From NCBI RefSeq assembly GCF_902459465.1, contig NC_047062.1:16058001-16122000 (forward strand): 64,000 bases of DNA, in the 5' to 3' direction. This stretch comes from Asterias rubens. Lineage: Eukaryota. The notes beneath the pieces were generated by a model that saw nothing but the letters and a program-made list of their open reading frames with translations, ran no database searches and had not been told where the DNA came from. Below are positions 9,564 to 60,589 of the stretch, piece by piece; position 1 is the stretch's first letter; every line of letters starts with the position of its first letter. The translations under genes and the position numbers were made by a program.

Positions 9564-9894
9564 TTAATTGTATGGTTATGATACATTTTCTATGGAGTTG
9601 CACTGGTCAGGTTTATGGCTTCTTCTCCCGTCCTTTTACCGCATTTGATGCTCGATATGGCGCTTTCTTTTGTTTTTACCTAACGAAGATCAAACACATG
9701 CAGAGTTGCTACTTCAAAAACAAACAAGCAAACAAACGTGACCAGTCAATCGACTTACTATGTTTGCTTTCTGTTTTGTTCCTCTTTCAGACCAAACGTG
9801 TGCGTTTCAAGGTGTTGCAGCGGTTGGAAACTAGACGCATATACAGGAGAGTGTACTATTCGTAAGTATTCAGTCAGAGTCACTTAAAGCTTAA

Positions 9895-11092: not shown

Positions 11093-11362
11093 CTGATTGC
11101 AGACGGCGCTGCCAAAATGGCGGCATTTGCATCCAGGCGCGGCCCGACGTCTGCCAGTGCAGAACGGGCTTCCACGGGACGTACTGCCAGTCGGCTCAGG
11201 TGAGCGCGGCTGGCGGTGGCAGGTACAGACCCCCATCGTCGTCATCATCATCATCATCAAGTGGTACGAGCGGCGGTCTTTTCTCTAATGGACGAGTCGT
11301 GACGTCATCAATGAGATCTTCATCGTCTGTTGTTAACTACAATGGTAGAACGTCATCATCTG
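11093..11362 (+). CDS. LTBP: E1: non-Ca EGF + Ser-rich linker
   Basis: tacag|CT; [32 protein letters not shown] then [25 protein letters not shown]...RTSSS; TCT G|gtaaga; 270 nt. Confidence 0.85.
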
Positions 11363-29300: not shown

Positions 29301-32300
29301 CAAAGGTTTCACACTTCAGGCTGAGAACTGTCTGGCATGTTTTGCTTACAATCTTTTATTCTTTCTTCAGATATCAATGAATGTAATGATGAAGATAGTT
29401 GTGTGAATGGCCAGTGTGTCAACCAACCAGGATCCTATCGCTGTGTATGCCCGACAGGAACACACATGTCTACAACGGAGGATAACACATGCATTGGTCA
29501 GTATTATCAGCAGGCATGATCTTCTTCCTACTATAGGCTGTTTGGGGTTTTTGCCTTTTTTTGGCCCTTGCACAAGTCACAAACATCATCATTAAAGGCA
29601 CTGAACACTATTGGTAATTACTCAAAATAATTGTTGGCTCCCTCTGAAGTAACTTCCTTTTTGAGAAATAGGTAACTTCTCACTCAAATTCAAAAAAAAG
29701 TAATGCAACAAGAGTGTTTTTTCTTTCCCTTGCAAATTCGATGACCAATTGAGCTAAACTTTTCACAGGTTTGTTATTTTATGCATAATGTTAAGATACA
29801 CCAAGTGAGAATTTACTGGTCTTTGACACTACCAAACAGTTCCAGTGTCTTTAATAAGGGTTAAAAGTCCAAAATACCTACATAATGTGCATCAGAATCT
29901 GCCAACTCTCCCCGATTCTGCGGAAAGTTCCCTGAAAATAAACCAATCCTTCCATGTTCTGATCAACAAATTTGAAAATCTTCCTGATTATGGAAACTTG
30001 TTCCCTTTATGTTGAATGTAATTCTAAATATTTTCCTGATTGCTGCACAAAATCTCCCAGAACTTGAATTTGATGCTCTTATTAACCACTCGGCCGTGAC
30101 ACCCTCTGAATCCACAGTGCAATTAAGCTTCCAATCTTTTTTCCCCGCAGATGTTGATGAATGTAGCGAGTCACCTGAAGTTTGTGGTGGAAATGGAATT
30201 ACTTGCGCCAATACCTTTGGTAGCTACACCTGTGAGTGCCCCAATGGTGCCATGTATGTTGAAGACATGCCCGGCTGCATCTACATGGACACCTTTACTG
30301 TTGGTAAATATACAAAATAACTTCTTCTACCACGCTCAGTGTTGTAGCCACAGTGGGCGGTACCAGGTTTGCGGCCTGCCTAGAACTAACAAATTTGGCA
30401 CAGCACTCGCAGCAAAATACACTGTGCGGCCCAGCACAGATTTCCCCCAGATGGTACTTCAGCAATTATGGCCCCATTTCTAAACATGAATAATTTTGTT
30501 GAACTGCTCGCCCTTGGTGGACTAGATTGGATTTAGAGCCCACCACTAAAATTGGTCTAGCTTACATTACTGTCCATGATCAATATAATTTTCAAATGTT
30601 TGCTATTTTTTTTTTTGCACTGTCAGCAGTAAAAACACATTTTAGGGAAAAATTACTGAGTTACGAATCTCTTATTGAGATTAAGCATACCAGTTGTTTC
30701 TTTGTTAATGTGAGGGATTATTTTCTCATTTTATTTGTATTGATTCATTATTATTATTCTTCAATTTTTCTTTCCAAGAAACAACGCCAGCTTCTCCCGC
30801 GACGCCCGATGAAGAAGAGCAAGGTCCAGAGAGGAAGGACTGCTACGCTTCTGTTGACGACCCCAATTTCTGCAGCAATACTTTATCCTCTAATGCTACC
30901 AGGCAGGAATGCTGCTGCAGCGTGGGTGCTGGCTGGGGAGATGACTGCCAGCTCTGGATTTGCCCGCCGGAAGACTCATGTAAGTCACTCAAAGTGAGCT
31001 AGTGCCAATAATTTCATAAAAGTTTTGATATTGATTTGATATTAGGTAGATTGATAAGCCCACTGTTTCACAATCGAATACCATATTGTACTAATAATGA
31101 TAACCGTATTAATCCTAATGACTAGTTTTTAGTTAGTGCATGAAACAATAATGTATTAGTGCACTTTACATTAGTGCCCTTGGTCATTGCCAATTGGGCA
31201 AAATATTTGACACTACAAAATGGCGACTGTGTTAGTTTACAAAGCAAAAGGAAAACCACAAACTTTGAGGCACACTTGATTGGATCATTATATTCTACTT
31301 TTACAGCATCTTTCCAGCCACATTCATTTCATAAGAAACGCTTCTTATCCAAGGCAACGAGTCCCTTTAACTAGTAGAAAACAAGTTTGGTTAAAAAGTT
31401 GAAATAAGGATATTATGTAACTAACACAATAAATGTTCCAGTAATAGTTGAACTTTGTGATTAAATCTTCGGAGTTTGTATTTTTATATGTATTCTTCAG
31501 TTGAATACAACCAGGTTTGTCCAATGGGGCGAGGGCATGCAGAGATTGAGGGCATAGAGGGATTGCATCCTGTTTTAGCAGCACAGAGAGACACAGGTGA
31601 GCAATGGACCCTTCCCATGAAATATGCTAATTACATTCACCCATGCATAAAGACCCTGTTGGTTGGCAAACTCCATAGAGTTGTGCACTAAATAGACGCG
31701 CAATCGCGTCTGCGTCACGCACCCATTACCAGTGATGTTCCCTACGTGCAATTTACATATTTCATTGGAAGGGTCTATTCTATTCAATTAAATTTATTTA
31801 TCATATTGGTGGTAAGTCATGGCCTAGCGGTTAAGAGCACCAGATTCAAGCTCTGGTGTTTGATCAGCAGAGTATGGGTTCGAGTCCCGGTCGTGACACT
31901 TGTGTCCTTAAGCAAGACACATAACCATGATTGCTTCCTAAAGTTGTGGAGGTAGTGCTTTCTGCTCTACCAGCCAGGCTTCTGATGGATGATACCCGAG
32001 CCTACATCCGTAAGGGACTGTGAAGGGGGTAACCCTGTTTCAGCCCAGGAGTACTGAGGTGGCAACGGCCCCTGAAAAAAACTTGCATATAAATCAAATC
32101 AAATCATGTGAAAACTCATTCGGGGTTTAATTTGAATGTCGTTTCTCTATCCTTGCAGGTATCAATGAGTGCAAAGTATTTCCACAGATCTGTGGTGAGT
32201 TATCCTGCTCTGATCTAAATATGATGTACACATGTGAATGTCCAGAAGGCCAACAATACAACATGGACAACAAGGAATGTGAAGGTATGTTCATTGTCTT

Positions 32301-35300
32301 TGCTCCCCGTGCCATTCTTTAGTAAAGAGTGCTCCCCTTTAATACGTTTTTTTATGAAGTTGTATCTTTCACACCTTGGCTTGTTGTTTTTTATTTTGGG
32401 TATGTGGTTGAACCATAGAGCTATATATATCGACTAGAGCACTAACACCCTGTTGTACGCCAATCGTACGGCTATTTGCATGATAGTGTGTTTGTTCTTT
32501 ACTATGGTGTCATCAAAACAGAAAATGCAGCAAATGTGAAAGCACAATCTCCTGATGAGCGAACAAACTGTGAGCGTCATGTGCGTCCTGTTTAAAAGGC
32601 GCGTATACTTTTTTTTTAGTACGTCAATCAAGTTGAACTTACGGTTTTCGTAGCGCGGACGTTCGCGAATGGGCAGTCGCGTACGTAAGCGCACATGCCA
32701 AATGTGAAAAAAAAAGTGGCAATGTGTTTCACTCAACACATCAAACATGTCTGCGTCCAGGGTGGATTCAAAACGCAGAGCAAGTTAGCGCTCTAGTCAA
32801 TATATATAGCTCTATGGGTTGAACACACAAAACATGAACACTGTCTGCATCTGTTTTAAACAGACCTGTGTAAAAACTTTAAGAGAAAATGTATCGCTAA
32901 CCCTCTCTACTGTGGCAGACCAGGGCCTAAGTTCATAGAGCTGCTTAACTGCCGATGTTGTGCTTACTGTGCAATTTCCATTTCATAGCAAAGCTTCGAA
33001 TGCTAACTTTATCAAATTGAATGACGGAATAATGCAAATTAATGTTGAACGGGCAATATGGCTTGTAAGCTAGTTTTTTAGCTTACCCGTTAAAATACGC
33101 TTACACCTTGGCAAATAAAGCACACAAATTTGCTTAACGTTAAGCAGCTCTAATAAATTGGGCTCAGGTGTTAAAAGCAGACGGATGGGAGTGTGTACTA
33201 AAGCCATCATTTGAATTCCCTTCTCTGAAGGCATTAATGAGTGTGAGACAAGCCCAGGTGTCTGTGGTAGATACCCCTGCGTTGATCTAGAGGTCTCTCA
33301 TACCTGCCAATGTCCTGATGGTCTCCGGTACAACCTCGACGACAGAAAATGTGAAGGTGTGTGTCTAGCTCAAAACATTGTTTCAGGTGTTGAACAAAGA
33401 CAAATTGACTAGAGCAGGGATTTGAACCAATGACTTCTGGATTAACATGGAGGCACTCTACCTACTGAGCTACACAAACATCTAGCCATTTGTTGGCGGT
33501 CTCCCTATTTTGTTACGGTCTTTGTCTGGGGGTGCTAGTCAGAAGCCGTACAACCGTAAACCGCTGTGTAGTCAGGGATCACAAGTTATCCCGCTCCAGT
33601 CATGTTGTCTTTGTTCAACTTAAATCATTTAAAATTTACCCAGTCATTTTTCCCTTGTGATTTATTGTTTGATATTTAAAGAGGTAGTATGATGAGTGCA
33701 GTCGGCTTAAGTTGTCGATTGTAAAAAAAAAAGAAGTTAAATTGACTTCTTGGGTTTTCTTGTCTGACCTCCTCAAGGCATCAATGAATGTGAAGAGGAC
33801 CCTGATATCTGCCAAGGAAAACAATGTGTTGATCTTGAGGTGATGTATACCTGTGAGTGCCCCGAGGGTACCCGCTACAATAGAGAGAACAGTCGCTGCG
33901 AGGGTAAGTCATTACAACTTCTACAAAAAAGAAAAATCTGTATTTAGTTTGCCTTGATAGATAGTTCCCATTTGACTAAAACTGAACCATTTTCTTTTTA
34001 ATGCACAACTATGCGTTTTGTGTAAATAGAGAACTATGTATTTACCTGGTGAGTCTTCAGCCACCTACCGCCCCAAGAGTCTCCCATTTGGTGGTGATCA
34101 CTCTACGTGGATTAACTCCTTTCAAATCTTTACTGGGGTGGAGGATTGGTGAGCCTTTCCCCTTCCCTTGTTGACTTCCTTCATTTGCGCCTCAAGCAGG
34201 TCAAAGTTTAGAGTGGTCATGTTTACGTTATAAAGAAAAGCTTGATGTGTTTTCCATCAGGTATCAATGAGTGCGACGTCAACCCAGGAATCTGTGGGAG
34301 TTTGCCATGTGAGGATCTGGAGACTCTGTATACCTGCCGTTGCCCTAATGGGTACCAGTACGATAGAGAAAGCAGACGCTGTGAAGGTAAACAATCTTAA
34401 TTGCTGAAATAAACTGATTTTTGTCACACAATTTTTGTTTTATAACCATTTTTTATGGTACTTTAACCCATTTTAATTGCTAATTTTAGCTGCCATTGTC
34501 ACTGATTTGAATATGAACAAAAAAGTTGAAATATTGCGTCGTCCCCCCCCCCATGATGTAAACCTCTGATTGTAAGATGTGTTAACATTTTTTGTCTCCC
34601 CAGAACTCAATACCTGTACCCGCTATCCGACCATCTGTGGTGAGGGGACTTGCGTGATTGATCGCTTTGGAGGATTCCAATGTACCTGCCCACAGGGACA
34701 GGAGTTCAGGCGCAACAGTCGCACCTGTCATGGTAATGTTTAACAGTTAAATTGGGTGTCCCGTTATACATAAATAGACTTGCAGGCATATAAATGAAAC
34801 TCAAACATTTTTGTAAATTCCTAATTCATGGATGAAGAATTGAGAATGTTGATATTAATTTTGTTTTTCACCCTTTTACCAATGTGTGTTCCACTGTATA
34901 CTCAGTACTTTCCTGAATTCTGTGAAAAAAAATCACAGGCATATTACTCGGGTGGGATTCGAACCCACGACCTTTGCAATTCTAGAGCAGAGCTTCCAAC
35001 TAGACTGCCTGGTAGCTAGAGGCAATCGCAACTGTTAGCAACTTGTTACTGCAATGATTTAAAGGCACTATTGGCAATTACTAAAAATAATTGTTAGCAT
35101 AAAAACTTACTTGGTAACAAGTAATGGAGAGCTGTTGATAGTATCAAACAGTGTGAGAAACGGCTCCCTCTGAAGTAATGAAGTTTTTTTTTTTGTCTTC
35201 TTAATTCCTCAGATAAGAACTGGTGTCGAAACAGTCATTGCGGTAATGGAACCTGTGTGGAGACCTTAGACAGCTTCCAGTGTGTGTGTCCAGAAGGATT

Positions 35301-53300: not shown

Positions 53301-56300
53301 CCAAAATGCATTCCTGGTAATTGTGGTATTAATACCAATTCTCACTTAAATCATGACAAACAATTATTTATCATCCAGTTGATATTTTTTTTTTTTTTTT
53401 CTTTTCTTATTAAAGCTGAGAATGGAAATAGTTGCACCAGTGTGCCAGGTATTTGTGGTAACGGTACCTGTGTACCTAACGGTGAGGATCATGACTGCGA
53501 ATGCCCGGACGGAGAAAGATTTAGCTGGCAGAGTAATCACTGTCAAGGTAAAAAAATCATCTCAAACTCAATGCCTCCAGAGCCATTTAAGGCGTTCAAA
53601 GTAGAGTTGGAACCCCCACCCCCCCCCCCCCACCCCATGAGAGAACGTACTTGATGTAAAAACCACCAGTGATACTTATAGTAACATTATATCTTTATAT
53701 TTGTGTCTGTTCCAGCTATAGAGGGAGCCCCCTTTGTTTCTTTCAGGCACTAGGCAGTCCGTCAGGATCTTGCTGGTTCATGTCTTTTCTATTTGGCATT
53801 TTTATGTTCTTGCTCAAGAAATTATATAAATATGTATATATTTTTTAATGTCACACAATATTTTTATCTGCCTAGCTACCTGGGCCCAATTTCATAGCTC
53901 AAAGATTTGCTAAAGACAACAGAGTTATGTTTTCTAGAAAAAGGACGCCAGCTAAAATACCATGTCATTAATATGTACAATTTGTGACTGGTATCATTAC
54001 CACTTAGTATCAAATTGATTTATAAGCACTATTTTCTGCTTAAGCAGCTCGGTGAAATTGGCCCCTGGTAAAAAGGTAGACTTCCTAACTTCAATCATTT
54101 AGCCTTTTTTAACACCCTCCCCCACTTCGATTGATAACAAATATTTCTTATTGGAGTATTTAAGTGTATCTTTGTATTCTGATTGTGTATAAAGTTTGTG
54201 ATTGGTTTTTAATCATTGGCTCAAGTTTTGTTGTTAGACTCTGCTGTTTTGTATGTATTTTTCTTGTTGCTGCATGTATTTTTTTGAGATCTCATTGTGC
54301 CATTCTCTCTTTATTTCAATTGCTAGTTAAATATTTCATGCCCATTGTCCTTTTAGACTTTTATACCAGTCGCATTTCCATTGTTTTGTACATATCTTTT
54401 TGTCTCAATGTTTTCAAATGTGTTCAGCTAAATCTTTTGCATTGTAGTTTTTAAGAAATTTTAAAGAAATTTGTACTTTGTATCAAGTGTATTTAATCCA
54501 ACCGGTTTTATATTCAGGTTGCTAATAAAACTGCTACTCTATTTCTCTTCTATAACCATTCTAATCTAAAATGTTGGGTTTTTTTTACTGTAGATATCAA
54601 TGAATGTGCAGAGTTCCCTAGAATCTGTGGCCAGGCTAACTGCATCAATAAGTATGGAGACTACAGCTGTTCTTGTATTGAAGGCTATGAACACGATGCA
54701 TCATCTAGATCATGTATTGGTTAGTTACAGTTAATCATCTCCCACCAAGCAGAGTTGTTATCTTATTCAAGCCCCCTTTCCCCAACTTCGATAAATTTCT
54801 TCCTATTTAGGTCAGGTTTCTGATTTAGTTTGTTGTCCGTTTGTTTGGTTGATTTTGGGTTTGTTTTGAGGGATGTTTGGGGAAAGAGGTAATCAAATAT
54901 TAAAATCTCTAGACCTAAAGCCTTTTATTAGCCATCTGAAAGCACACAAATTTGTGCAACAAGGGTGTTGTTTCTTTTATTATTCTCTTGCAACTTCGAT
55001 GACCAATTGAGTTAAAATTTTCACAGGTTTGTTATTTTATGCATATGTTGAGATAAACCAAGTGAGAATACTGGTCTTTGACAATTACCAATAGTGTCCA
55101 GTGTCTTTTAAGAGGAACGGTTTCCCGATCCATCACCAAACAAACTATTCTTTTTGTTTTATAAATTGTTTCATTAATGATCCCCAAACTGTTGTCTTCC
55201 AAAATTAATCATTCAGCTGTTTTTGTCTCTCTGCCCACAGATATAGATGAATGTTCAGTGAACGAGGACATATGTAATAATGGGTTATGCGTGAATGAGG
55301 ATGGCGGGTTCCTGTGCATCTGCCCTGCACGCTCAGCCTTTGACTACAACACCATGTTCTGTGTGCCAACAGGTAGAATTTGAAAGGAATATTTTCTAGA
55401 ATTGCAAAGGTCATGGGTTCGAATCCCGACCGAGTAATATGCCTGTGGATTTTTCTTCACAGAACTCAGGAGTATGAGTATACAGTGTTAACACACATCG
55501 GTGTTAGGGTGAAACCAAAATTATAATCCATTAAATCAGTCTGGTACCCACTGCTACCACATAGGATTCATACTGCCTCTAGCCACCGAGCGTGGTCCTA
55601 GCTCGGTGGTCCAGTGGTAAACATCTGCTCTAGCAGTGCAAAGGTCTGAGGTTCAATCCCACCCGAGTGCCTGTGGATTTGTTTTTCTCATGACTGTGGG
55701 GAAAATACTGAGTAAACAGTGCATTTCAAACCGGCTTATGGTAGAAACAAGTAATATTCTTTATCCCCAATGCAAATCTAACATCTGTTTAAAGATGTAT
55801 TTTAATCTTATTTGTTTTATTCTTAATGCAATGTCTTTTTTCATTTCTGTATCAAAAATCCATCATATGGTTTTTACTTGAATTTGATGGGACTTGGTAC
55901 CAAAAACAACACCCTTAGCATGAGGCCAAGTGCATCGAAGAATTCTGAATTGCACAAACATCAAAATACAATGCGAGGCAAAAGGGAAACCCCAAACATG
56001 CCCCCAGGCCCACTGTGTCTGATCACACATCAGAATAAATTTTAAAAAAGACAACATAAAAGAACAGTAACACAACTGTAACAAATATTCCTCTGTCCAT
56101 TCAGGTGACCCCAACTCATTACCAGAGCCCCCTAGACGCGCTTTCACCGGCGGTAACACGGAGAGTATCAATGAATGTAACCAAACACCCAGCCCATGCA
56201 CCGATGGAATATGCATTGATACCGATGCAGGATTCAGATGCCAATGCACCGACGGGTATCGACTGATTGAGGACGAGAACCGATGTGTTGGTGAGTCACA

Positions 56301-59300
56301 TGTTACTTTTCAAAACAAAAATTGACTTGGTTTCAAAAAGGGCAAATGTTGTCAAGGATTGGGAGGTTGCCTTATTTTCGAAAATGGTGTTATTTCGGCA
56401 GAGGTGTAGCACAGTAAGACGAAAGAAAACTTGGGACAGAAAAAGCAAAACAAAAACTTTTCAGGATCATTTGTCAGTTTGAAGTCCTGCACCACAAGTG
56501 TATGTTTTTAAACTTACTGATGGAGTCAAGGCCGAGGTCTTAGCCCAAGACGGTTTCAAAAAGGGCCTTTACATGACACATTTTGACACTTATTGTTTTC
56601 ATGAAAGTAAAGAACTGTGTGGTTAAATTTTAACAACTTTGATATTTTTTTGTCATAAAGTCTATCACTTATTCAATCGTTTCTTCATTCACAAAACATT
56701 TCAAAGCCTGCAGTGAATTTATAAACATTAAATGATACATATTTCCTTTTCATCCTTCATTTCTGAATTTATTTCCATCTTTAAAAACTCACTGTGTTAA
56801 TTGAATATGCTAATCTGTATTGTTGATTTGGCCTGGTCTTTGGCTTGGTTCCTTCCTGTATAAAAGTTTTATCTGTTGTATATTCTGCATTTTGCTTTTA
56901 CGTCTATGTACACAAAAGAACTTTTTTTGTTTAATGACACATGTTTCCTTTTACAGGCTTCCATGTTTCTGTTGTTGTAAAATTCTGTGTTAGCTTTTGT
57001 AGTCCAGATTTTGTTAACAGAGTGCTTCTCGTTTAACGTTTTAAAGTGCTTGTTTTAGTCCTTTTTAAATTTGTTCCGTCGATCATTATTTCCTTCCTTG
57101 TTAAGTGCTTTCTGTTAAATTGTGTACCTTTCTCATATTTTTGTTCTGCTTTTGTTATTGCATTATTTTTGTAAGTTTGTATCTCTGTATTTTGGTGCTG
57201 TTGACCTGGGTTTACTAATCAGTCTTTTAGGACATCAGCACCATAGCACTTGAAAACATACTGGTAGTATTAAGCGCTGTATAAATCATAAATGTATATT
57301 GTTATTACTTTTATTATGCTTTAGATGTTATGCACAATATAAGTTCTATTTATTATTATAGTCATCTTTAAAAACTTTCTATTTTAGTTGAGTATGCTAA
57401 TCAATGCTGTTTGTTTGGCCTAGTCTTTGTCAGTATTTTGAACAAGTCTAAATTTCTCTTTTAAAAGTGGGTGGTTTTTTTCTGGGGTTTTTTGTATAAT
57501 TTGTTTGCTGCAAATGTAAATGCTAAATATGTAATTTAATGTAGGCCTACAATTTATTGGTTTTAAATTTTAAAATTTTAAACTTTATAGCAATCTATCC
57601 CCTAGGCTACAAAGGCTTTTTTTTTTTTTTTATTGAACCAGAAATAACATCAATATATTCTTCAATTTTTTATTTTGTGTCTTCTATCGGTCCTAGATAT
57701 AAATGAATGTGCATCTCAGGAAGAGGTTTGTCTGTATGGTAATTGCATTAATGAGAAGGGCTCCTTCCGTTGTGAATGCAGAGAGCCGCTGACCCTGGAT
57801 AGCACCGGCCGGAGATGTATATGTAAGTAGCAGTAGTTAATCCTTCATGGAGTTTATTTTTTAGACCTTTCTATCACAGCGTCAAAGCCCAAGTTTTTGG
57901 CCAACTGAGGTTGGAAAACTATTGGGAAGTCATAATAAAAAACAAAAACAGATGGCCACAGTTTGTAACAATGCCACACAACTATTCAAAAATATAGTGT
58001 TGAATTTGTTAGAACCAAAGCAACTAATCATGAGAGATGTTTTATTTATTTGAAAGTTTTATTCATTTGAAAGTTTGCAAAAAGTGTTGAATTTTGTCAG
58101 ACATCTGATAACACGATTTAATGTTTTGCTAACATTTGGCCGTACATACCAAACAGCTCGATTTGTTGAAATGTCTATCATGATGCCGCCATCTTGGTCA
58201 AGTTCCCTGTATCCAATAATCAGTAATGAAAGCTAATTTACATTGTACAAGGTACCAGACTACTTTTTCTTGCCTTGGTTTGATTACAATGAGTTGGATT
58301 AAAATAAAATCAAGATGGCAATATCATGGATGAGGTTCAAAGAACTGCTAAATTGGTCTCATAACTCAAAAAGCTGACTTTAAAAGAAATTTAAATAAGC
58401 ACTTTCATACAGTGGTAAATATAAAAACTATATAAAAACTAGTTGTTTTTATTATTTTGTATAAATAAACAACTTCTAAATCGATCTTGTATGTTTAATT
58501 TCCCCCAGCTGTTATCGGTGTGGTCGGTACAGAAAGAGACAATAGAAAGAGTCTTTGCTGGCACAAAACAGATAATCCCGGGTACGAGTCAGTGTGTGGA
58601 ATGATCGTTAATACAGCTCTGACTTACAAGGAATGTTGCTGCTCTGAAGGAGTGGGTTGGGGAACAAGTTGCGACCCTTGCCCTCCCAACGGTGGATGTG
58701 AGTCAATCTTAAACATTTCACTTCACATACTTTGTCTTTTGCACAAACGATAGTGATAAAACTGAAACTTGTAAATTTCTCACCAAATATAAAGAAATCC
58801 TGCTCTCTGCTTTGCTTCTCATGTGCATCGATTTTAAATTGCTACTTTTTGTGTAATTTAATATTTATTTTTAAAACTTTTTTTAATGATGTAAAAATCA
58901 AACTCAATTCAGCCTCCTGAAGGCTGTGAAACTTATTTCTGAAATTAACCAATCAATAATCAATAATAAATATTTATATGAATGTATTCCAAATGAAGAT
59001 GAACAAGGAGTTCTCTGTGAGACTGGTCAGGATCCATCGGGTCAAACTGGCTCAGGACCGGCCGCTGTCCGTGAGTACCCAGACGGCTTCTATCATCCAA
59101 CTGGTGAGGATGGAATATACGCACACGGTTCTGAAGGGACGACCAGCGTAGTGGAGGTGTAAGTTAGCATTCAGTGTTTTTTTCTTGGTTTTGTTGTTGT
59201 TTTGTTGTTGTTTTTTAGGGCATGTCTTGTTTGAGCAGTCTACTGATGGCTGAATGATGTGTGTGGGTGCAATTCCCAGTCATGATAATTGTGTCCTTGA

Positions 59301-60589
59301 AATAGTTCTGAAAAATAGAGTTTCAAAGGATCAAATGCAGATCAACAAGAAACAATGTGATTATTTAAAACGAAAGCTAGCTAGAAGTTATATCTTCCGT
59401 TTTACAAATGTTCTTAATAATGATAACAAACCTCTTTTTTTTCAGGTTTAATCCAAATGTTGGTCCAGACCAAGGTGGTCCTCGTCCATTTAGAGAACCG
59501 TATCCGACTGGTCAGTCCACTGGAGGTTCTCCACCCTACACTGGTAGGCAACCTCCCTACACAGGCGGGCAACAACCGAACCCTGCTGGTCAGCCACCGT
59601 ACTATGGTGGTCAGTCACCAAACCCTGCCGGTCAACCTCCCTACTACGGTGGTCAGTCACCAAACCCCGGTGGCCAACGACCCTACTATGGGGGACAGAC
59701 ACAGAATGCTGGCGGTCAACCTCTTAACACTGGCGGTCAACAACCTTATTATGGTGGCCAGTCACCAAATCCTGTCCGTCCAAATCCCTACTACGGTGGG
59801 CAGACGCCAAACCCTGGCGGTCAACCCCCGTACACTGGCAGACAACCTCCCTACACAGGTGGTCAGTCACAAACTCCAAGCGGGCAGCCTCCGTACTACG
59901 GAGGGCAGCAGCAACCATACCCTAGTGGTGGGCAGAACTACCAAGGAGGAGGGCAGCAACCAACATACCCTGGCCGACAACAGCCCAACTATAACCCCAA
60001 CCCTAACACCAGGCCACAAGGTGTTAATCCTAGACCTCAAACTGGAGGTGGAGGACAGCCAAGCAGGGGCACATCTGGGCAAGGTAAGAACAATTGGAAA
60101 ACAAAATTGGGTGGCTATTAAATCGTCCTTACTCCCAACTGAGAAGCTGAATAATGCACGACACATCCACGTGTTTGAGCTGCAGCCAGTCACACTGACC
60201 CATATGACCCCTGAGCACAGCCAGATTATAAGCTGAAATCGATTCTCAAGGAAGCCATTTGAAAATCTGAAACTCTTTGTTAAACTTAGTTTATGTTTCC
60301 ATGTTATTGGATTGATAAACTGTGGGCTCATAAAAGTAACTTAACAAAAAAAACAGAAAAAAAACGAATGATAATAATTCACACAAAAATATCTTGATTT
60401 TTAATAAATACTCCTTTGTTTTCTCAACAAACTTCAGGCGCAGGTGCCTGTGATAGTTTACCACAAAACATCTGCGGTCAAGGGAAGTGCCTCAATGTGG
60501 AGGGGACCTACACATGCCAGTGCTACGCTGGCTTCTCATTTGATAACGACCAAAAACGCTGCGTACGAGCAAGATACAACAGAGGCTGA
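11093..60589 (+). CDS. LTBP: LTBP-like gene (latent TGF-beta binding protein), 41 coding exons in window, 5'-incomplete; EGF-hybrid-cbEGF-TB1-5xEGF-TB2-24xEGF-TB3-GQPY repeat-EGF
   Basis: Manual splice model: every exon is flanked by AG/GT and the reading frame is continuous. 38 exons are phase 1-1; E39/E40 join in phase 2. Total 6047 nt ending in TGA at 60587. The hybrid + three TB (8-Cys, CCC) domains + 32 EGF modules match the LTBP layout, not fibrillin. Confidence 0.9.
13954..14030 (+). repeat. 17-bp CpG-rich tandem repeat (~4.5 copies)
   Basis: gacaactcgacggttcg units at 13954, 13971, 13988, 14005. Confidence 0.85.
15704..15886 (+). CDS. LTBP: E2: hybrid domain, 5' part
   Basis: tacag|GT; ...[46 protein letters not shown]; G|gtgagt; 183 nt. 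Confidence 0.92.
16186..16335 (-). mobile_element. SINE fragment with V-domain-like block
   Basis: Reverse complement: gcctttcacctc...ccccggttcgaatc...gggttttcagtcccc...tgcgtgggttttccccc...ggttttcctc; related head at 45991-46090 (+). Confidence 0.65.
17504..17564 (+). pseudogene. Donor-less duplicate of hybrid-domain exon E3
   Basis: ttttcag|[22 protein letters not shown], part of a ~135-bp tandem duplication (17429-17564 / 17565-17699); no GT at the equivalent donor position. Confidence 0.75.
17637..17699 (+). CDS. LTBP: E3: hybrid domain, 3' part
   Basis: tttacag|GA; [21 protein letters not shown]; G|gtaagt; 63 nt. Confidence 0.9.
18156..18281 (+). CDS. LTBP: E4: cbEGF
   Basis: tccag|AT; [42 protein letters not shown]; A|gtaagt. 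Confidence 0.95.
18686..19027. mobile_element. Kolobok-like MITE family 1 copy (opposite orientation)
   Basis: TTAA|agcactggacacg...gtccagtgcct|TTAA. Confidence 0.85.
19119..19274 (+). CDS. LTBP: E5: TB1 (8-Cys) domain
   Basis: [51 protein letters not shown]; G|gtaaga. Confidence 0.93.
20604..20675 (+). CDS. LTBP: E6: end of TB1 and short linker
   Basis: ctgcag|CT; [24 protein letters not shown]; 3' end uncertain (in-phase donors at 20631, 20670 and 20676). Confidence 0.8.
22569..22941. mobile_element. Kolobok-like MITE family 1 copy
   Basis: TTAA|agacacaggacactattggtaatt...aattaccaatagtgtccactgcct|TTAA. Confidence 0.9.
22967..23347. mobile_element. Fully palindromic TTAA-flanked MITE family 3
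   Basis: TIR AGGAACACGTTGC; whole element folds back around gggagtcaaa|tttgactccc (23156/7). Confidence 0.88.
26399..26530 (+). CDS. LTBP: E7: EGF
   Basis: [44 protein letters not shown]; G|gtaggg. Confidence 0.93.
26674..27053. mobile_element. Kolobok-like MITE family 1 copy
   Basis: TTAA|agacactgaacactattggtaatt...gtgtccactgcct|TTAA. Confidence 0.9.
27814..27939 (+). CDS. LTBP: E8: cbEGF
   Basis: [42 protein letters not shown]; G|gtgaag. Confidence 0.93.
28804..28932 (+). CDS. LTBP: E9: cbEGF
   Basis: [43 protein letters not shown]; G|gtaatt. Confidence 0.93.
29042..29300 (+). mobile_element. Degraded SINE of the 61631 family
   Basis: gtgggttcaagtc...gtgacacttgtgcccttaagcaagacactt, then body similar to 61760-61900. 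Confidence 0.7.
29371..29496 (+). CDS. LTBP: E10: cbEGF
   Basis: [42 protein letters not shown]; G|gtcagt. Confidence 0.93.
29596..29850. mobile_element. Kolobok-like MITE family 1 copy, internally deleted
   Basis: TTAA|aggcactgaacactattggtaatt...ttccagtgtct|TTAA. Confidence 0.85.
30151..30303 (+). CDS. LTBP: E11: cbEGF + linker
   Basis: [51 protein letters not shown]; G|gtaaat. Confidence 0.92.
30779..30979 (+). CDS. LTBP: E12: TB2, TGF-beta-binding type 8-Cys domain (C-x4-C)
   Basis: [67 protein letters not shown]; T|gtaagt. Confidence 0.93.
31501..31596 (+). CDS. LTBP: E13: end of TB2 + linker
   Basis: ttcttcag|TT; [32 protein letters not shown]; G|gtgagc. Confidence 0.92.
31811..32074 (+). 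mobile_element. tRNA-derived SINE, same head as 61631 but different body
   Basis: tggcctagcgg...ggttcgagtcc...gtgtccttaagcaagacac; body matches 36579-36685. Confidence 0.8.
32159..32284 (+). CDS. LTBP: E14: EGF (GINEC type)
   Basis: [42 protein letters not shown]; G|gtatgt. Confidence 0.93.
32414..32816. mobile_element. Non-autonomous DNA transposon with CATAGAG termini and 8-bp TSD (P-element-like)
   Basis: 33-bp TIR CATAGAGCTATATATAT(C/T)GACTAGAGC(A/G)CTAAC; GGTTGAAC duplicated at 32406-13 and 32817-24. Confidence 0.85.
32925..33163. mobile_element. CCWGG-flank MITE
   Basis: CCAGG|gcctaagttcatagagctgcttaa...ttaagcagctctaataaattgggc|TCAGG. Confidence 0.7.
33231..33356 (+). CDS. LTBP: E15: EGF (GINEC type)
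   Basis: [42 protein letters not shown]; G|gtgtgt. Confidence 0.92.
33389..33619. mobile_element. Foldback element with tRNA-like arms, copy 1
   Basis: gttgaacaaagacaa / ttgtctttgttcaac perfect 15-bp ends; minus-strand A-box (TAGCTCAGTAGG) and B-box (GGTTCAAATC). Confidence 0.7.
33778..33903 (+). CDS. LTBP: E16: EGF (GINEC type)
   Basis: [42 protein letters not shown]; G|gtaagt. Confidence 0.93.
34261..34386 (+). CDS. LTBP: E17: EGF (GINEC type)
   Basis: [42 protein letters not shown]; G|gtaaac. Confidence 0.93.
34604..34732 (+). CDS. LTBP: E18: EGF (paralog of E25)
   Basis: [43 protein letters not shown]; G|gtaatg. Confidence 0.92.
35063..35180. mobile_element. Kolobok-like MITE family 1 fragment
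   Basis: One end only (ttaaaggcactattggcaattac...ctccctctgaagta); stops ~30 nt before the E19 acceptor. Confidence 0.75.
35213..35332 (+). CDS. LTBP: E19: EGF (paralog of E26)
   Basis: [40 protein letters not shown]; G|gttagt. Confidence 0.92.
35617..35742 (+). CDS. LTBP: E20: EGF
   Basis: [42 protein letters not shown]; G|gtaaat. Confidence 0.92.
   Translation, partial: LLTSVEDIQIFAAMGPAWPEIAPTDVSVRKDMNSRISTVLA
36290..36505. mobile_element. Foldback element with a perfect 79-bp inverted repeat and CCGAGGCGAAGCC centre
   Basis: 36290-36368 is the exact reverse complement of 36427-36505. Confidence 0.8.
36816..37002 (+). repeat. 93-bp tandem duplication x2
   Basis: catgaaacagatttgtcc...gtttctttttg at 36816 and 36909, identical as read. 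Confidence 0.9.
37217..37342 (+). CDS. LTBP: E21: EGF
   Basis: [42 protein letters not shown]; T|gtaagt. Confidence 0.92.
37422..37935. mobile_element. Foldback-headed element (perfect 34-bp IR 37444-77 / 37499-532) with ctcgaccaat motifs
   Basis: Inverted repeat seen directly; right boundary approximate. Confidence 0.6.
38198..38310. repeat. ~110-bp palindromic element with CTCF-like ends, second copy
   Basis: ctctaggcggcagcagac...accaggta / tacctggtagtctgccgcc. Confidence 0.65.
38594..38961. mobile_element. Fully palindromic TTAA-flanked MITE family 3, second copy
   Basis: TTAA|aggaacacgttgccttggatc...gatccaaggcaacgtgttcct|TTAA; a right-half fragment also at ~31205-31366. Confidence 0.9.
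39083..39211 (+). CDS. LTBP: E22: EGF
   Basis: [43 protein letters not shown]; A|gtaaat. Confidence 0.9.
39664..40003. mobile_element. Foldback element with AGGCGAAGCCGAGG centre
   Basis: acaattgttgcacgctgtgac (39664) / gtcacagcgtgcaacaattgt (39823); tail with ctcgaccaatcaaa ends ~20 nt before the E23 acceptor. Confidence 0.65.
40026..40151 (+). CDS. LTBP: E23: EGF
   Basis: [42 protein letters not shown]; G|gtagga. Confidence 0.9.
40370..40560. mobile_element. Foldback element with tRNA-like arms, copy 2
   Basis: Two ~62-bp tRNA-like segments back to back (40381-40444 minus, 40461-40522 plus). Confidence 0.72.
40662..41107. mobile_element. Foldback element with CTCGGCCTTCGGCCTCGG centre
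   Basis: Imperfect ~85-bp arms spanning 40912-41098; ttctgattggct motif at 5' side. Confidence 0.65.
41241..41366 (+). CDS. LTBP: E24: EGF
   Basis: [42 protein letters not shown]; G|gtaagt. Confidence 0.9.
41447..41641. mobile_element. MITE, PIF/Harbinger-like
   Basis: 32-bp TIR AGCCCGGTTCATACTTCC(A/T)GCGAATGCGAATG; left flank TAA, right flank TTC; superfamily assignment tentative. Confidence 0.75.
41937..42065 (+). CDS. LTBP: E25: EGF (paralog of E18)
   Basis: [43 protein letters not shown]; G|gtaaac. Confidence 0.92.
42386..43276 (+). repeat. 137-bp tandem repeat x6, each containing 23-bp subrepeats
   Basis: Unit starts at 42386, 42523, 42660, 42797, 42934, 43071; last unit is 206 bp (three extra ttgatattgtgtatggaaaagcc). 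Confidence 0.95.
43337..43891 (+). repeat. 37-bp minisatellite x15
   Basis: ATA(A/T)ATAGGTACCTG(C/T)(A/T)AGGGTAGAGGTTGATAGTGT, head to tail. Confidence 0.95.
44164..44283 (+). CDS. LTBP: E26: EGF (paralog of E19)
   Basis: [40 protein letters not shown]; G|gtgagt. Confidence 0.9.
44311..44770. mobile_element. Foldback element with tRNA-like arms, copy 3, right arm split by a MITE (44550-44709)
   Basis: Left arm reverse complement: gatagctcagttgatagagcgccagcacgttaatccagaggtcccaggttcaagtccc; right arm the same but interrupted. Confidence 0.72.
44862..44987 (+). CDS. LTBP: E27: cbEGF
   Basis: [42 protein letters not shown]; G|gtaggt. Confidence 0.93.
45417..45536 (+). CDS. LTBP: E28: cbEGF
   Basis: [40 protein letters not shown]; G|gtgagc. 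Confidence 0.94.
45592..45923. mobile_element. Kolobok-like MITE family 1 copy
   Basis: TTAA|agacactggacactatt...aattaccaatagtttgaagtgcc. Confidence 0.8.
45991..46090 (+). mobile_element. tRNA-Gly-like SINE head
   Basis: ggttggtgtagtgg...gccttccacc...ccccggttcaaatccc, then gggttttcagtccct; no proper cloverleaf. Confidence 0.6.
46197..46316 (+). CDS. LTBP: E29: cbEGF
   Basis: [40 protein letters not shown]; G|gtaaga. Confidence 0.94.
46862..46987 (+). CDS. LTBP: E30: cbEGF
   Basis: [42 protein letters not shown]; G|gtgagt. Confidence 0.93.
47303..47680. mobile_element. Kolobok-like MITE family 1, best-preserved copy
   Basis: Perfect 24-bp TIR AGGCAGTGGACACTATTGGTAATT and TTAA on both sides; no ORF; TTAA TSD with RR termini is the Kolobok signature. 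Confidence 0.92.
48513..48699. mobile_element. CCWGG-family MITE
   Basis: ggccaaatttcatagagctgctt...aagcagctctattgaatgtggcc. Confidence 0.65.
49295..49663. mobile_element. Kolobok-like MITE family 2
   Basis: TTAA|agccattggacccttttggta...taccgaaagggtccaatggct|TTAA, 21-bp TIR with 1 mismatch. Confidence 0.88.
49698..49817 (+). CDS. LTBP: E31: EGF
   Basis: [40 protein letters not shown]; G|gtaagt. Confidence 0.92.
50962..51087 (+). CDS. LTBP: E32: EGF
   Basis: [42 protein letters not shown]; G|gtgggt. Confidence 0.92.
52468..52543 (+). pseudogene. Degenerate EGF pseudo-exon fragment resembling E33
   Basis: Reads [22 protein letters not shown], against E33 [20 protein letters not shown]; no acceptor AG; cut off by a MITE. 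Confidence 0.5.
52707..53077. mobile_element. Kolobok-like MITE (variant TIR), nested in a CCWGG-family MITE
   Basis: TIR A(A/G)GGAAGGTACACGTTTGGTAATT, TTAA TSD; host MITE 52540-52702 resumes as gcaactctat at 53082. Confidence 0.88.
53416..53547 (+). CDS. LTBP: E33: non-Ca EGF
   Basis: [44 protein letters not shown]; G|gtaaaa. Confidence 0.9.
53884..54063. mobile_element. CCWGG-flank MITE
   Basis: CCTGG|gcccaatttcatagc...agctcggtgaaattggcc|CCTGG: exact 5-bp duplication. Confidence 0.75.
54594..54719 (+). CDS. LTBP: E34: cbEGF
   Basis: [42 protein letters not shown]; G|gttagt. Confidence 0.93.
54895..55106. mobile_element. Kolobok-like MITE family 1 half copy
   Basis: Right half ending aattaccaatagtgtccagtgtct; left start approximate. 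Confidence 0.78.
55241..55372 (+). CDS. LTBP: E35: cbEGF
   Basis: [44 protein letters not shown]; G|gtagaa. Confidence 0.93.
55395..55765 (+). mobile_element. Two tandem copies of another tRNA-derived SINE family
   Basis: tgcaaaggtc...ggttcgaatccc...cgagt...gcctgtggattt repeated; relatives at 34915-35030 (-) and 45205-45335 (+). Confidence 0.7.
56105..56290 (+). CDS. LTBP: E36: linker + EGF
   Basis: [62 protein letters not shown]; G|gtgagt. Confidence 0.92.
57697..57822 (+). CDS. LTBP: E37: cbEGF
   Basis: [42 protein letters not shown]; T|gtaagt. Confidence 0.94.
58509..58697 (+). CDS. LTBP: E38: TB3 (8-Cys) domain
   Basis: [63 protein letters not shown]; T|gtgagt. Confidence 0.93.
58999..59158 (+). 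CDS. LTBP: E39: end of TB3 + linker (phase 1 in, phase 2 out)
   Basis: [53 protein letters not shown]; GT|gtaagt. The acceptor (tgaag) has a weak pyrimidine tract but is the only in-phase, stop-free choice I found. Confidence 0.8.
59446..60083 (+). CDS. LTBP: E40: 212-aa Gly/Gln/Pro/Tyr-rich repeat exon
   Basis: tttttcag|G (phase 2, matches E39); [11 protein letters not shown]...([14 protein letters not shown]-like)n...RGTSGQ; G|gtaaga; 638 nt; lies inside ORF 59408..60121. Confidence 0.88.
60438..60589 (+). CDS. LTBP: E41: terminal EGF and stop
   Basis: cttcag|GC; [50 protein letters not shown]; an alternative in-frame acceptor lies 6 nt downstream (60444). Confidence 0.88.

What the first reader, a model, noticed from the sequence alone, without database searches (positions are those of the whole stretch)
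30779..60589. LTBP with an inverted rod: 24 EGF modules AFTER the TGF-beta-binding TB domain and only 5 before it
Seen: TB1-(5 EGF)-TB2-(24 EGF)-TB3-repeat-EGF. Established: vertebrate LTBPs carry the long cbEGF run (roughly 9-13) between TB1 and the TGF-beta-binding TB domain, and only about two cbEGFs between that domain and the last TB. The C-terminal region is what docks on fibrillin. Inference: here the latent-cytokine attachment site is moved roughly 1000 residues away from the fibrillin-anchoring end. That changes the geometry of the lever used for force-dependent TGF-beta activation. It is a lineage-specific architecture I do not recognise from vertebrates.
Basis: partly seen in the sequence, partly recalled or inferred. 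Interest (0 to 1): 0.82.

Follow-up and report, generated by a model that had tools for sequence, protein, structure and literature searches.

The report
Echinoderm LTBP with expanded EGF rod
This is a real, transcribed gene for the echinoderm version of the matrix protein that tethers latent TGF-beta, and in echinoderms the cytokine-holding domain is separated from the tail by 16-24 EGF modules instead of the usual two.

Summary
On the + strand, one LTBP-type gene runs from about 9.7 kb to the stop at 60587-60589.

From the hybrid domain onward, 40 AG/GT exons splice into a 1924-aa open frame. The order is hybrid, cbEGF, TB-A, 5 EGF, TB-B, 24 EGF, TB-C, a ~260-aa G/Q/P/Y low-complexity linker, one EGF, stop.

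- **TB-B identity:** it carries the two-residue insertion between Cys6 and Cys7. It groups with the LAP-binding TB of LTBPs. Its best solved match is human LTBP1 (1ksq, 9r3s).
- **Transcripts:** RNA contigs from three runs splice TB-B directly to the next four EGF exons and continue 1.3-1.6 kb upstream.
- **Not unique to this genome:** pre-/post-TB-B EGF counts are 5/17 in Diadema, 5/18 in S. purpuratus and 11/16 in the crinoid Antedon. A hemichordate (5/2), amphioxus (10/2), a tunicate and vertebrates (8-12/2) keep two.
- **Not an inversion:** b1-b4 match the first ancestral post-TB cbEGF and b24 the second. The run therefore expanded between those two modules.
- **New EGF subtype:** the inserted modules carry an echinoderm-only N-glycosylation sequon.

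TGF-beta binding, fibrillin docking and any changed force geometry remain untested. I class it as a new variant of a known kind, of moderate interest. The scan's other notes on this locus (s1-180036, s1-180017) lie on this same window.

The parts
9704..9861 (+). N-terminal 4-Cys exon (PNVC..CCSGW..C). The 5' boundary is uncertain and the signal-peptide exon was not found.
   Evidence: Collinear tblastn match to the S. purpuratus and Antedon orthologues. GTAAGT donor at 9861.
11093..11400 (+). First, non-calcium EGF followed by a Ser-rich stretch. The 3' end of the exon was not fixed.
15704..17699 (+). Hybrid (CC-type 8-Cys) domain, encoded by exons 15704-15886 and 17637-17699.
   Evidence: Pfam TB 41 bits. 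About 51% identity to the sea-urchin hybrid domain. Second exon found.
18156..18281 (+). cbEGF between the hybrid domain and TB-A.
   Evidence: DVNEC motif, AG/GT flanks, 126 nt.
19119..20675 (+). TB-A, the first true TB (Cys6-x2-Cys7), encoded by exons 19119-19274 and 20604-20675.
   Evidence: Pfam TB. Groups with sea-urchin first TBs at 100/98 support. Boundaries.
26399..30303 (+). Five EGF exons a1-a5: 26399-26530, 27814-27939, 28804-28932, 29371-29496, 30151-30303. Four have the DxDEC calcium consensus.
   Evidence: Best hits are pre-TB EGFs 1-4 of the sea-urchin proteins.
30779..31596 (+). TB-B, the LAP-binding-type TB with C6-QLWI-C7, encoded by exons 30779-30979 and 31501-31596.
   Evidence: Both exons appear spliced in RNA contig X1 record 1; in X2 record 3 and X3 record 6 the second exon is implied by the record numbering.
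32159..34386 (+). EGF b1-b4, a quartet of 'GINEC' modules: 32159-32284, 33231-33356, 33778-33903, 34261-34386. They are tandem copies of the first ancestral post-TB cbEGF.
   Evidence: RNA contigs join them consecutively to TB-B. All four hit sea-urchin post1 best, and Glandiceps post1 is the first or second non-echinoderm hit.
34604..44283 (+). EGF b5-b13, non-calcium modules, most with a 'C-G-N-G-T-C' sequon. Exons: 34604-34732, 35213-35332, 35617-35742, 37217-37342, 39083-39211, 40026-40151, 41241-41366, 41937-42065, 44164-44283. The pair b5/b6 is an old duplicate of b12/b13.
   Evidence: The duplicates are 85-86% identical and the match is limited to the exons. b6-b7 are spliced together in RNA contigs.
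44862..57822 (+). EGF b14-b24, mostly canonical cbEGF. Exons: 44862-44987, 45417-45536, 46197-46316, 46862-46987, 49698-49817, 50962-51087, 53416-53547, 54594-54719, 55241-55372, 56105-56290, 57697-57822. b24 is the orthologue of the cbEGF that precedes the last TB in other LTBPs.
   Evidence: b24's best hits are the last post-TB EGF of sea urchins (64-66%) and post2 of Glandiceps and vertebrates.
58509..59158 (+). TB-C, the last TB (Cys6-x2-Cys7), encoded by exons 58509-58697 and 58999-59158.
   Evidence: Pfam TB. Falls in the last-TB group, with weak support. The second exon was chosen by the frame test.
59446..60083 (+). Gly/Gln/Pro/Tyr low-complexity linker exon (212 aa).
   Evidence: Open frame that keeps the model in frame. 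No Pfam hit.
60438..60589 (+). Last exon: one non-calcium EGF, a short tail, and the stop at 60587-60589. An alternative acceptor lies at 60444.
   Evidence: The Antedon protein ends at the same point.

Best explanation

**Shown**
- It is one transcribed gene encoding 4-Cys, EGF, hybrid, cbEGF, TB-A, 5 EGF, TB-B, 24 EGF, TB-C, a low-complexity linker and one EGF.
- TB-B is the orthologue of the TB that disulphide-bonds the TGF-beta propeptide in vertebrate LTBP1/3/4.
- The 24-module run arose by expansion between the two ancestral cbEGFs that separate this TB from the last TB in hemichordates and chordates.
- A run of this kind (16-18 modules) is present in sea urchins and a crinoid. This lineage added tandem duplications.
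- Many inserted modules are a non-calcium EGF subtype with a conserved N-glycosylation sequon.

**Inferred**
- The protein is secreted into the matrix.
- TB-B covalently holds the single RGD-bearing echinoderm pro-TGF-beta.
- TB-C plus the last EGF dock on fibrillin.
- The cytokine would then sit about 1066 residues from the C-terminal anchor. That is roughly 60-70 nm if the run is extended, taking about 2.5-3 nm per EGF module; this per-module figure is from my memory of cbEGF pair structures. In other deuterostomes the gap is about 120 residues.
- The cytokine would sit close (5 EGF) to the N-terminal half of the protein.
For: - **Gene model:** 40 AG/GT exons give a 1924-aa frame without an internal stop.
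- **Transcripts:** X1 record 1 lists six consecutive pieces, 30778-30979, 31501-31593, 32156-32279, 33226-33353, 33775-33902 and 34260-34384, with no gaps, and runs on about 1.3 kb upstream. X2 record 3 and X3 record 6 list five of them, with the 31501-31593 piece implied by a 93-nt jump in the record numbering; X3 record 6 runs on about 1.6 kb upstream, X2 record 3 only about 115 nt. Two 850-nt contigs join b6 and b7 and run 545 nt further downstream. RNA runs also hold 0.10-0.18 of the words of 50.9-60.6 kb, against an exon fraction of about 0.20.
- **TB-B identity:** the phmmer best stretches fall on the penultimate TB of vertebrate LTBPs. It has the Cys6-x4-Cys7 spacing. It lies in one clade with all insertion-bearing TBs, at 82/91 support, or 92/94 without the insertion columns. 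In the PDB search, LTBP1 1ksq scores E 5e-16 against 6e-7 for a fibrillin TB.
- **Published background:** the insertion is reported as critical for LAP binding and found only in LTBPs (PMC3306419).
- **Comparative layouts:**
- **Positional orthology:** b1-b4 and b24.
- **Collinearity:** the gene is collinear end to end with the sea-urchin and crinoid proteins.
- **Ligand:** echinoderms have one RGD-bearing TGF-beta (PMC10268255).
- **Fibrillin site:** fibrillin binds LTBP1 through the last TB plus the following EGF (PMC5548924), and both modules are present here.
Against: - No binding data exist for any echinoderm LTBP.
- The insertion dipeptide lacks the Pro seen in chordates and the hemichordate. 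Those read EIFP, EIYP or NLWP, whereas echinoderms read QLWI, DLMI, DLIV or EFWL.
- The C-terminus lacks the final cbEGF that is said to be conserved in LTBP-like proteins (PMC3906135).
- It also carries a 260-aa low-complexity linker, so fibrillin docking may differ.
- All EGF exons are symmetric (phase 1-1), so shorter isoforms are possible. Antedon has isoforms that differ by about one EGF.
Confidence: 0.75

Rival explanations
1. The gene descends from LTBP but is now mainly a structural, heavily glycosylated matrix rod that no longer tethers TGF-beta, comparable to LTBP2 in vertebrates. On this reading the long EGF run reflects a mechanical or spacing role in echinoderm connective tissue.
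For: - The insertion lacks the Pro of chordate and hemichordate LTBPs.
- There are 22 extra modules, 10 of them with an N-glycan sequon.
- The C-terminus is altered: no terminal cbEGF and a G/Q/P/Y linker.
Against: - TB-B is the best-conserved part of the protein: 63-65% identity to sea-urchin TB-B and about 57-59% to human LTBP1 TB by my count from the alignment.
- It keeps the insertion length, a hydrophobic dipeptide and the flanking GAGWGDDC motif in all four echinoderm sequences. That argues for retained ligand binding.
Confidence: 0.17
2. The 24-module run overstates the mature protein. Most transcripts skip many of the in-phase EGF exons, so the common isoform is closer to the canonical layout.
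For: - All EGF exons are phase 1-1 and can be skipped without breaking the frame.
- Antedon has four predicted isoforms that differ by about one EGF.
- Expression is low, 2-5 reads deep in X10.
Against: - Contigs from three independent RNA assemblies contain b1-b4 consecutively, and two contain b6-b7 plus 545 nt more.
- No exon-skipping joint was among the joints listed.
- Sea-urchin and crinoid models keep 16-18 modules.
Confidence: 0.06
3. The layout is an assembly or annotation artefact: two genes fused, or a haplotype duplication that inflates the count.
For: One pair of exons (b5/b6) recurs as b12/b13.
Against: - The copies are only 85-86% identical, the match is limited to the exons, and the intron lengths differ.
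- RNA contigs cross from upstream of TB-B into the EGF run.
- Orthologues are collinear across the whole span.
Confidence: 0.02

Closest known systems
Vertebrate LTBP1/LTBP3 (solved parts: 1ksq, 9r3s)
   Same: - Same module order: 4-Cys, EGF, hybrid, cbEGF, TB, EGF run, insertion-bearing TB, EGFs, last TB, EGF.
- The insertion-bearing TB shows about 57-59% identity to human LTBP1 TB (my count from the alignment).
- The cbEGF before the last TB is conserved (b24, about 50% identity).
   Different: - 24 EGFs lie between the insertion-bearing TB and the last TB, instead of 2.
- 5 EGFs precede that TB, instead of 8-12.
- There is no terminal cbEGF.
- A 260-aa G/Q/P/Y linker is present.
- The insertion reads LWI rather than IFP/IYP.
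Hemichordate LTBP (Glandiceps XP_077996106, 845 aa)
   Same: - Five EGFs precede the insertion-bearing TB.
- The insertion motif is similar (NLWP against QLWI).
- Same set of TB and hybrid domains.
   Different: The hemichordate keeps 2 cbEGFs after that TB and the EGF-cbEGF tail. It therefore shows the unexpanded state of the sister phylum.
Echinoderm predicted proteins: S. purpuratus XP_011666114 ('fibrillin-1 isoform X3'), Diadema setosum XP_072166683, Antedon mediterranea XP_071962422 ('uncharacterized')
   Same: - Orthologous and collinear with the window gene.
- Long post-TB EGF run with the same sequon-bearing EGF subtype.
   Different: - 16-18 post-TB EGFs against 24.
- The window has extra tandem copies (b1-b4 quartet, b5/b6 against b12/b13).
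- The window has a much longer C-terminal low-complexity linker.
- The sea-urchin models stop just after the last TB.
Fibrillins
   Same: Same superfamily modules: cbEGF, TB and hybrid.
   Different: - Human fibrillin has 7 TB (PMC3306419) and, from memory, 2 hybrid domains and about 47 EGFs. The regex parse here recovered 5-6 TB in each of the three fibrillin models used for the tree (17 in all).
- No fibrillin TB has the Cys6-Cys7 insertion (PMC3306419).
- This gene has 3 TB and 1 hybrid, and its TB-B carries the insertion.

Membership tests
LTBP orthogroup (deuterostome LTBP-like proteins) | One hybrid plus three TB domains, in the order hybrid - cbEGF - TB - EGFs - TB - EGFs - TB | tested here: met
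   Domain parse of the spliced product and Pfam TB hits on all four 8-Cys exons.
LTBP orthogroup (deuterostome LTBP-like proteins) | Two-residue insertion between Cys6 and Cys7 of the penultimate TB. Reported as critical for LAP binding and absent from fibrillin TBs (PMC3306419). | tested here: met
   TB-B has C-QLWI-C. TB-A and TB-C have C-x2-C.
LTBP orthogroup (deuterostome LTBP-like proteins) | The penultimate TB groups with the LAP-binding TBs of known LTBPs, not with fibrillin TBs or the first LTBP TB | tested here: met
   The 12 insertion-bearing TBs form one group at 82/91 support, or 92/94 with the insertion columns removed. The best PDB hits are LTBP1.
LTBP orthogroup (deuterostome LTBP-like proteins) | N-terminal 4-Cys motif followed by a non-calcium EGF | tested here: met
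   Exons at about 9704-9861 and 11093 onward align to the N-termini of the sea-urchin and crinoid proteins. The signal peptide was not located.
LTBP orthogroup (deuterostome LTBP-like proteins) | Covalent complex with the TGF-beta propeptide | not testable with these tools
   This needs co-expression or biochemistry. An unchecked scan note (s1-150746) reports a TGF-beta gene with an RGD motif and an LTBP-type Cys 5.5 Mb away in the same genome.
Canonical LTBP layout (hemichordate to vertebrate) | Two cbEGFs between the insertion-bearing TB and the last TB | tested here: not met
   The window has 24 EGFs (1066 residues). Glandiceps, amphioxus, Styela and vertebrates have 2, spanning 116-124 residues where measured.
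Canonical LTBP layout (hemichordate to vertebrate) | C-terminal EGF-cbEGF pair after the last TB (PMC3906135) | tested here: not met
   Only one non-calcium EGF is followed by the stop. No further EGF lies on the + strand before 64000. Antedon ends the same way.
Fibrillin | Seven TB (PMC3306419), two hybrid domains and about 47 EGFs (the last two figures from memory), with no insertion-bearing TB | tested here: not met
   The window gene has three TB, one hybrid and 32 EGFs, and TB-B carries the insertion.

The most novel reading that the evidence does not exclude
In echinoderms the latent TGF-beta tether would be built the other way round functionally. The cytokine would hang next to the N-terminal matrix anchor and tens of nanometres from the fibrillin-binding tail, on a glycosylated, partly non-calcium EGF rod. 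That would uncouple the LAP site from the fibrillin site, whose adjacency is thought to matter for traction-based activation in vertebrates. It could give echinoderm connective tissue a different, longer-range or tension-gated mode of TGF-beta release.
Probability: 0.2. Interest if true: 0.75.

Novelty: new variant of a known kind. Interest (0 to 1): 0.52.

Why it matters
In vertebrates the fibrillin-binding site of LTBP1 lies next to the propeptide-binding TB, and this adjacency is proposed to help integrin traction release TGF-beta (PMC5548924).

Echinoderms offer a natural variant in which the same two elements are separated by 16-24 EGF modules, while their sister phylum keeps the compact form. 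That makes the importance of the spacing testable by swapping rods or comparing activation.

It also corrects database names ('fibrillin-1 isoform X3', 'uncharacterized protein') for the sea-urchin and crinoid genes. It qualifies the published statement that the cbEGF-TB-EGF-cbEGF tail is conserved in all LTBP-like proteins (PMC3906135).

Tried and rejected
- **Own-species protein:** I looked for an annotated protein of the window's own species. None appeared among the phmmer hits or in two word-index searches, which were swamped by fibrillins and fish LTBPs.
- **Short high-identity hits:** the fragments P0007 to P0039 carry no names.
- **Logan contig L001:** the contig behind P0023 turned out to be a compact vertebrate-type LTBP locus with two cbEGFs after the TB, so it gave no extra echinoderm.
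- **P0016 (3587 aa):** it matched only the low-complexity start of the query and has no tblastn hit in the window.
- **Papers not held:** Robertson et al. 2011 (Biochem J), Robertson and Rifkin 2013, and Saharinen and Keski-Oja 2000 are not in the library. I therefore cannot exclude that the sea-urchin layout was drawn there. A full-text search for 'LTBP-like' plus 'purpuratus' found nothing.
- **Assembly artefact:** I rejected this for the b5/b6 against b12/b13 repeat, because the copies are 85-86% identical and the match is limited to the exons.
- **Phase-0 or phase-2 junction at b22/b23:** I rejected this in favour of a strong phase-1 acceptor at 56105.
- **Left undone:** the signal-peptide exon and the exact ends of the Ser-rich exon were not determined.
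Full report
**What is in the sequence**

A regex scan for the six-Cys EGF pattern finds 31 hits, all on the + strand, between 11.1 kb and 60.6 kb. One further EGF at 28.8 kb, with an unusual Cys4-x4-Cys5 spacing, was added by eye. Four 8-Cys exons lie among them. One has a CC doublet (hybrid type, 15.7 kb). Three have the CCC triplet (TB type; 19.1, 30.8 and 58.5 kb).

Each of the 29 EGF modules between the first and last TB sits on its own exon. Every exon has AG and GT flanks and a length divisible by three, so all are phase 1-1. The one apparent exception, b23, resolves with a strong acceptor at 56105 that adds a 20-residue linker.

Splicing 40 exons from the hybrid domain (15704) to the stop at 60587-60589 gives a 1924-aa frame without an internal stop. 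Pfam TB scores above its curated cut-off on all four 8-Cys exons. Of five EGF exons sampled, four reach the EGF_CA or EGF cut-off; b1 gives only sub-threshold EGF-type hits.

The parsed order is:
1. hybrid
2. cbEGF
3. TB-A
4. 5 EGF
5. TB-B
6. 24 EGF
7. TB-C
8. about 260 aa of G/Q/P/Y-rich low complexity
9. one non-calcium EGF
10. stop

The 4-Cys exon is at about 9.7 kb and the first EGF at 11.1 kb. I did not find the signal-peptide exon.

**Is it transcribed as one gene?**

RNA runs hold about 0.16 of the sampled words of 30.7-36.7 kb, close to the exon fraction. I laid four runs on 30700-36699.

- X1 record 1 (2111 nt) lists TB-B exon 1, TB-B exon 2 and EGF b1, b2, b3, b4 as consecutive, gap-free pieces. 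X2 record 3 (955 nt) and X3 record 6 (2479 nt) list five of the six; the second TB-B exon is implied by a 93-nt jump in their record numbering.
- X1 record 1 and X3 record 6 run on 1.3 kb and 1.6 kb upstream of TB-B. By length that reaches the hybrid domain and beyond. X2 record 3 runs on only about 115 nt.
- X1 matches the window without a single difference in those pieces.
- Two 850-nt contigs join b6 and b7 and continue 545 nt downstream. That length fits b8-b11 plus the start of b12; this reading is an inference from length alone.
- The contigs break at b5 and b12, which are the two copies of a duplicated exon.

For 50.9-60.6 kb the same RNA runs hold 0.10-0.18 of the words, against an exon fraction of about 0.20.

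The b5/b6 against b12/b13 repeat is an old tandem duplication. The copies are 85-86% identical, the match covers the exons only, and the introns differ. It is not an assembly artefact.

**Which TB is which?**

TB-B has four residues (QLWI) between Cys6 and Cys7. TB-A and TB-C have two. A two-residue insertion at this place is reported to be critical for covalent binding of the TGF-beta propeptide. It is reported in all LTBP-like proteins and in no fibrillin TB (PMC3306419).

- A phmmer search of the TB-B exon against 1.8 billion representative proteins returns LTBPs. The best-matching stretch is always the penultimate TB.
- Against solved structures the best hits are human LTBP1 (9r3s chain C, and 1ksq at E 5e-16). 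The best fibrillin TB scores E 6e-7.
- In a maximum-likelihood tree of 52 TB domains, the 12 insertion-bearing TBs form one group at 82/91 support. Support rises to 92/94 when the insertion columns are left out.
- In that tree the window's TB-B joins sea-urchin TB-B (96/93) and TB-A joins sea-urchin first TBs (100/98).
- TB-C falls in the last-TB group, but with weak support.

It does not.

**Relatives and the direction of change**

The closest full-length proteins are RefSeq models:
- Diadema setosum XP_072166683 ('uncharacterized')
- S. purpuratus XP_011666114 ('fibrillin-1 isoform X3')
- the crinoid Antedon mediterranea XP_071962422 ('uncharacterized')

All three are collinear with the window from the N-terminal or hybrid-domain exons to the last TB, and Antedon on to the last EGF.

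| Species or group | EGFs before / after the insertion-bearing TB |
|---|---|
| Window | 5 / 24 |
| Diadema | 5 / 17 |
| S. purpuratus | 5 / 18 |
| Antedon | 11 / 16 |
| Hemichordate Glandiceps | 5 / 2 |
| Amphioxus | 10 / 2 |
| Styela | 6 / 2 |
| Vertebrate LTBPs | 8-12 / 2 (one model 3) |

The spacer between that TB and the last TB is 744-1066 residues in echinoderms. It is 116-124 residues in Glandiceps, amphioxus and the two vertebrate LTBPs measured.

EGF-by-EGF best hits show how the run grew:
- b1-b4 all match the first post-TB EGF of sea urchins best, and the first post-TB cbEGF of Glandiceps is their first or second non-echinoderm hit.
- b24 matches the last post-TB EGF of sea urchins (64-66% identity). 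It also matches the second post-TB cbEGF of Glandiceps and vertebrates.

The run therefore grew between the two ancestral cbEGFs. The five pre-TB EGFs are the number also seen in the hemichordate and the sea urchins, and are not the product of an inversion.

The inserted modules share a derived mark. An N-x-S/T sequon sits directly before Cys3 ('C-G-N-G-T-C') in 10 of 24 (window), 7 of 17, 9 of 18 and 10 of 16 post-TB EGFs. It occurs in no pre-TB EGF and in no hemichordate, amphioxus or vertebrate LTBP examined. I take this as evidence for one expansion in the echinoderm stem, but that is an inference.

The TB tree places the window with sea urchins to the exclusion of the crinoid, at 47-66% module identity. 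It therefore comes from an eleutherozoan echinoderm, not a close relative of either sea urchin compared. The window-specific surplus over sea urchins is explained by tandem copies: the b1-b4 quartet and the b5/b6-b12/b13 pair.

**How it probably works**

What is shown: the module order, the orthology of the three TBs, transcription, and the route of expansion.

What I infer from established knowledge of LTBPs:
- The protein is a secreted matrix protein.
- TB-B forms the disulphide link to the propeptide of the single echinoderm TGF-beta, which carries an RGD motif (PMC10268255).
- The last TB plus the following EGF are the two elements by which LTBP1 binds fibrillin (PMC5548924). Both are present here and may do the same.

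If so, the cytokine sits 5 EGFs from TB-A but 24 EGFs from the C-terminal anchor. That is roughly 60-70 nm if extended, taking about 2.5-3 nm per module. This per-module figure comes from my memory of cbEGF pair structures and was not computed here.

Only 7 of the 24 modules have the strict N-terminal calcium consensus, and 10 lack it altogether. Much of the rod may therefore be more flexible than a canonical cbEGF array, and it is probably N-glycosylated.

Points against a simple transfer of function:
- The insertion lacks the Pro of chordate and hemichordate LTBPs.
- The terminal cbEGF is missing.
- A 212-aa G/Q/P/Y exon has been added.

**Comparison with the literature**

PMC3906135 states that the cbEGF-TB-EGF-cbEGF tail is conserved in all complete LTBP-like sequences, including the acorn worm. 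The window and Antedon proteins end after a single non-calcium EGF, and the sea-urchin models end earlier still. PMC5548924 stresses that the fibrillin site lies adjacent to the LAP site, which does not hold here.

I found no paper in the searchable library that describes the echinoderm layout. The key review (Robertson et al. 2011) is not held, so prior description cannot be ruled out.

**Verdict**

It is an echinoderm-wide variant of the LTBP architecture produced by expansion, not inversion. This genome has the longest run seen so far.

The mechanical reading is plausible but untested. I class it as a new variant of a known kind, with moderate interest.

An unchecked scan note (s1-150746) reports a TGF-beta gene with an RGD motif and an LTBP-type cysteine 5.5 Mb away in the same genome. 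If correct, it is the expected partner.

Noticed in passing
window 17503-17565 (compare 17637-17699): A decayed tandem copy of the 63-nt second exon of the hybrid domain. It is 88% identical over 129 nt, including the upstream intron. The acceptor is kept but there is no GT donor, so it is probably a dead pseudo-exon.
   Followed up: partly
window 42170-44002: The intron between EGF b12 and b13 holds two satellites: a 137-nt unit with about 8 copies and a 37-nt unit with about 20 copies. This explains the GC-skew spike at 42-44 kb.
   Followed up: partly
window 34944-35014 (- strand), also 31869-31937, 36579-36648, 42188-43321: A tRNA-like head (Rfam tRNA 29.2 bits, just at threshold; ARAGORN finds none) and shared tails of a SINE family lie in the introns. 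RNA depth over 34.9-35.3 kb is about a hundred to tens of thousands of times that of the neighbouring exons, which points to a very abundant or expressed repeat.
   Followed up: partly
window 59446-60083: A 212-aa Gly/Gln/Pro/Tyr low-complexity exon ('PPYYGGQ'-like repeats) lies between the last TB and the last EGF. It has no Pfam hit. The crinoid orthologue has only about 45 residues there. This is the subject of scan note s1-180017.
   Followed up: partly
window 35213-53547 (EGF b6-b11, b13, b17, b19, b20): A conserved N-glycosylation sequon sits directly before Cys3 in 10 post-TB EGFs. It is shared with sea-urchin and crinoid orthologues and absent from other LTBPs examined, so it marks an echinoderm-specific EGF subtype.
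   Followed up: yes
locus L001 (Logan contig ERR4790868_553): A compact vertebrate-type LTBP locus with the canonical TB - 2 cbEGF - TB - EGF - cbEGF tail within about 3 kb. It was fetched by mistake while I was looking for more echinoderms.
   Followed up: yes
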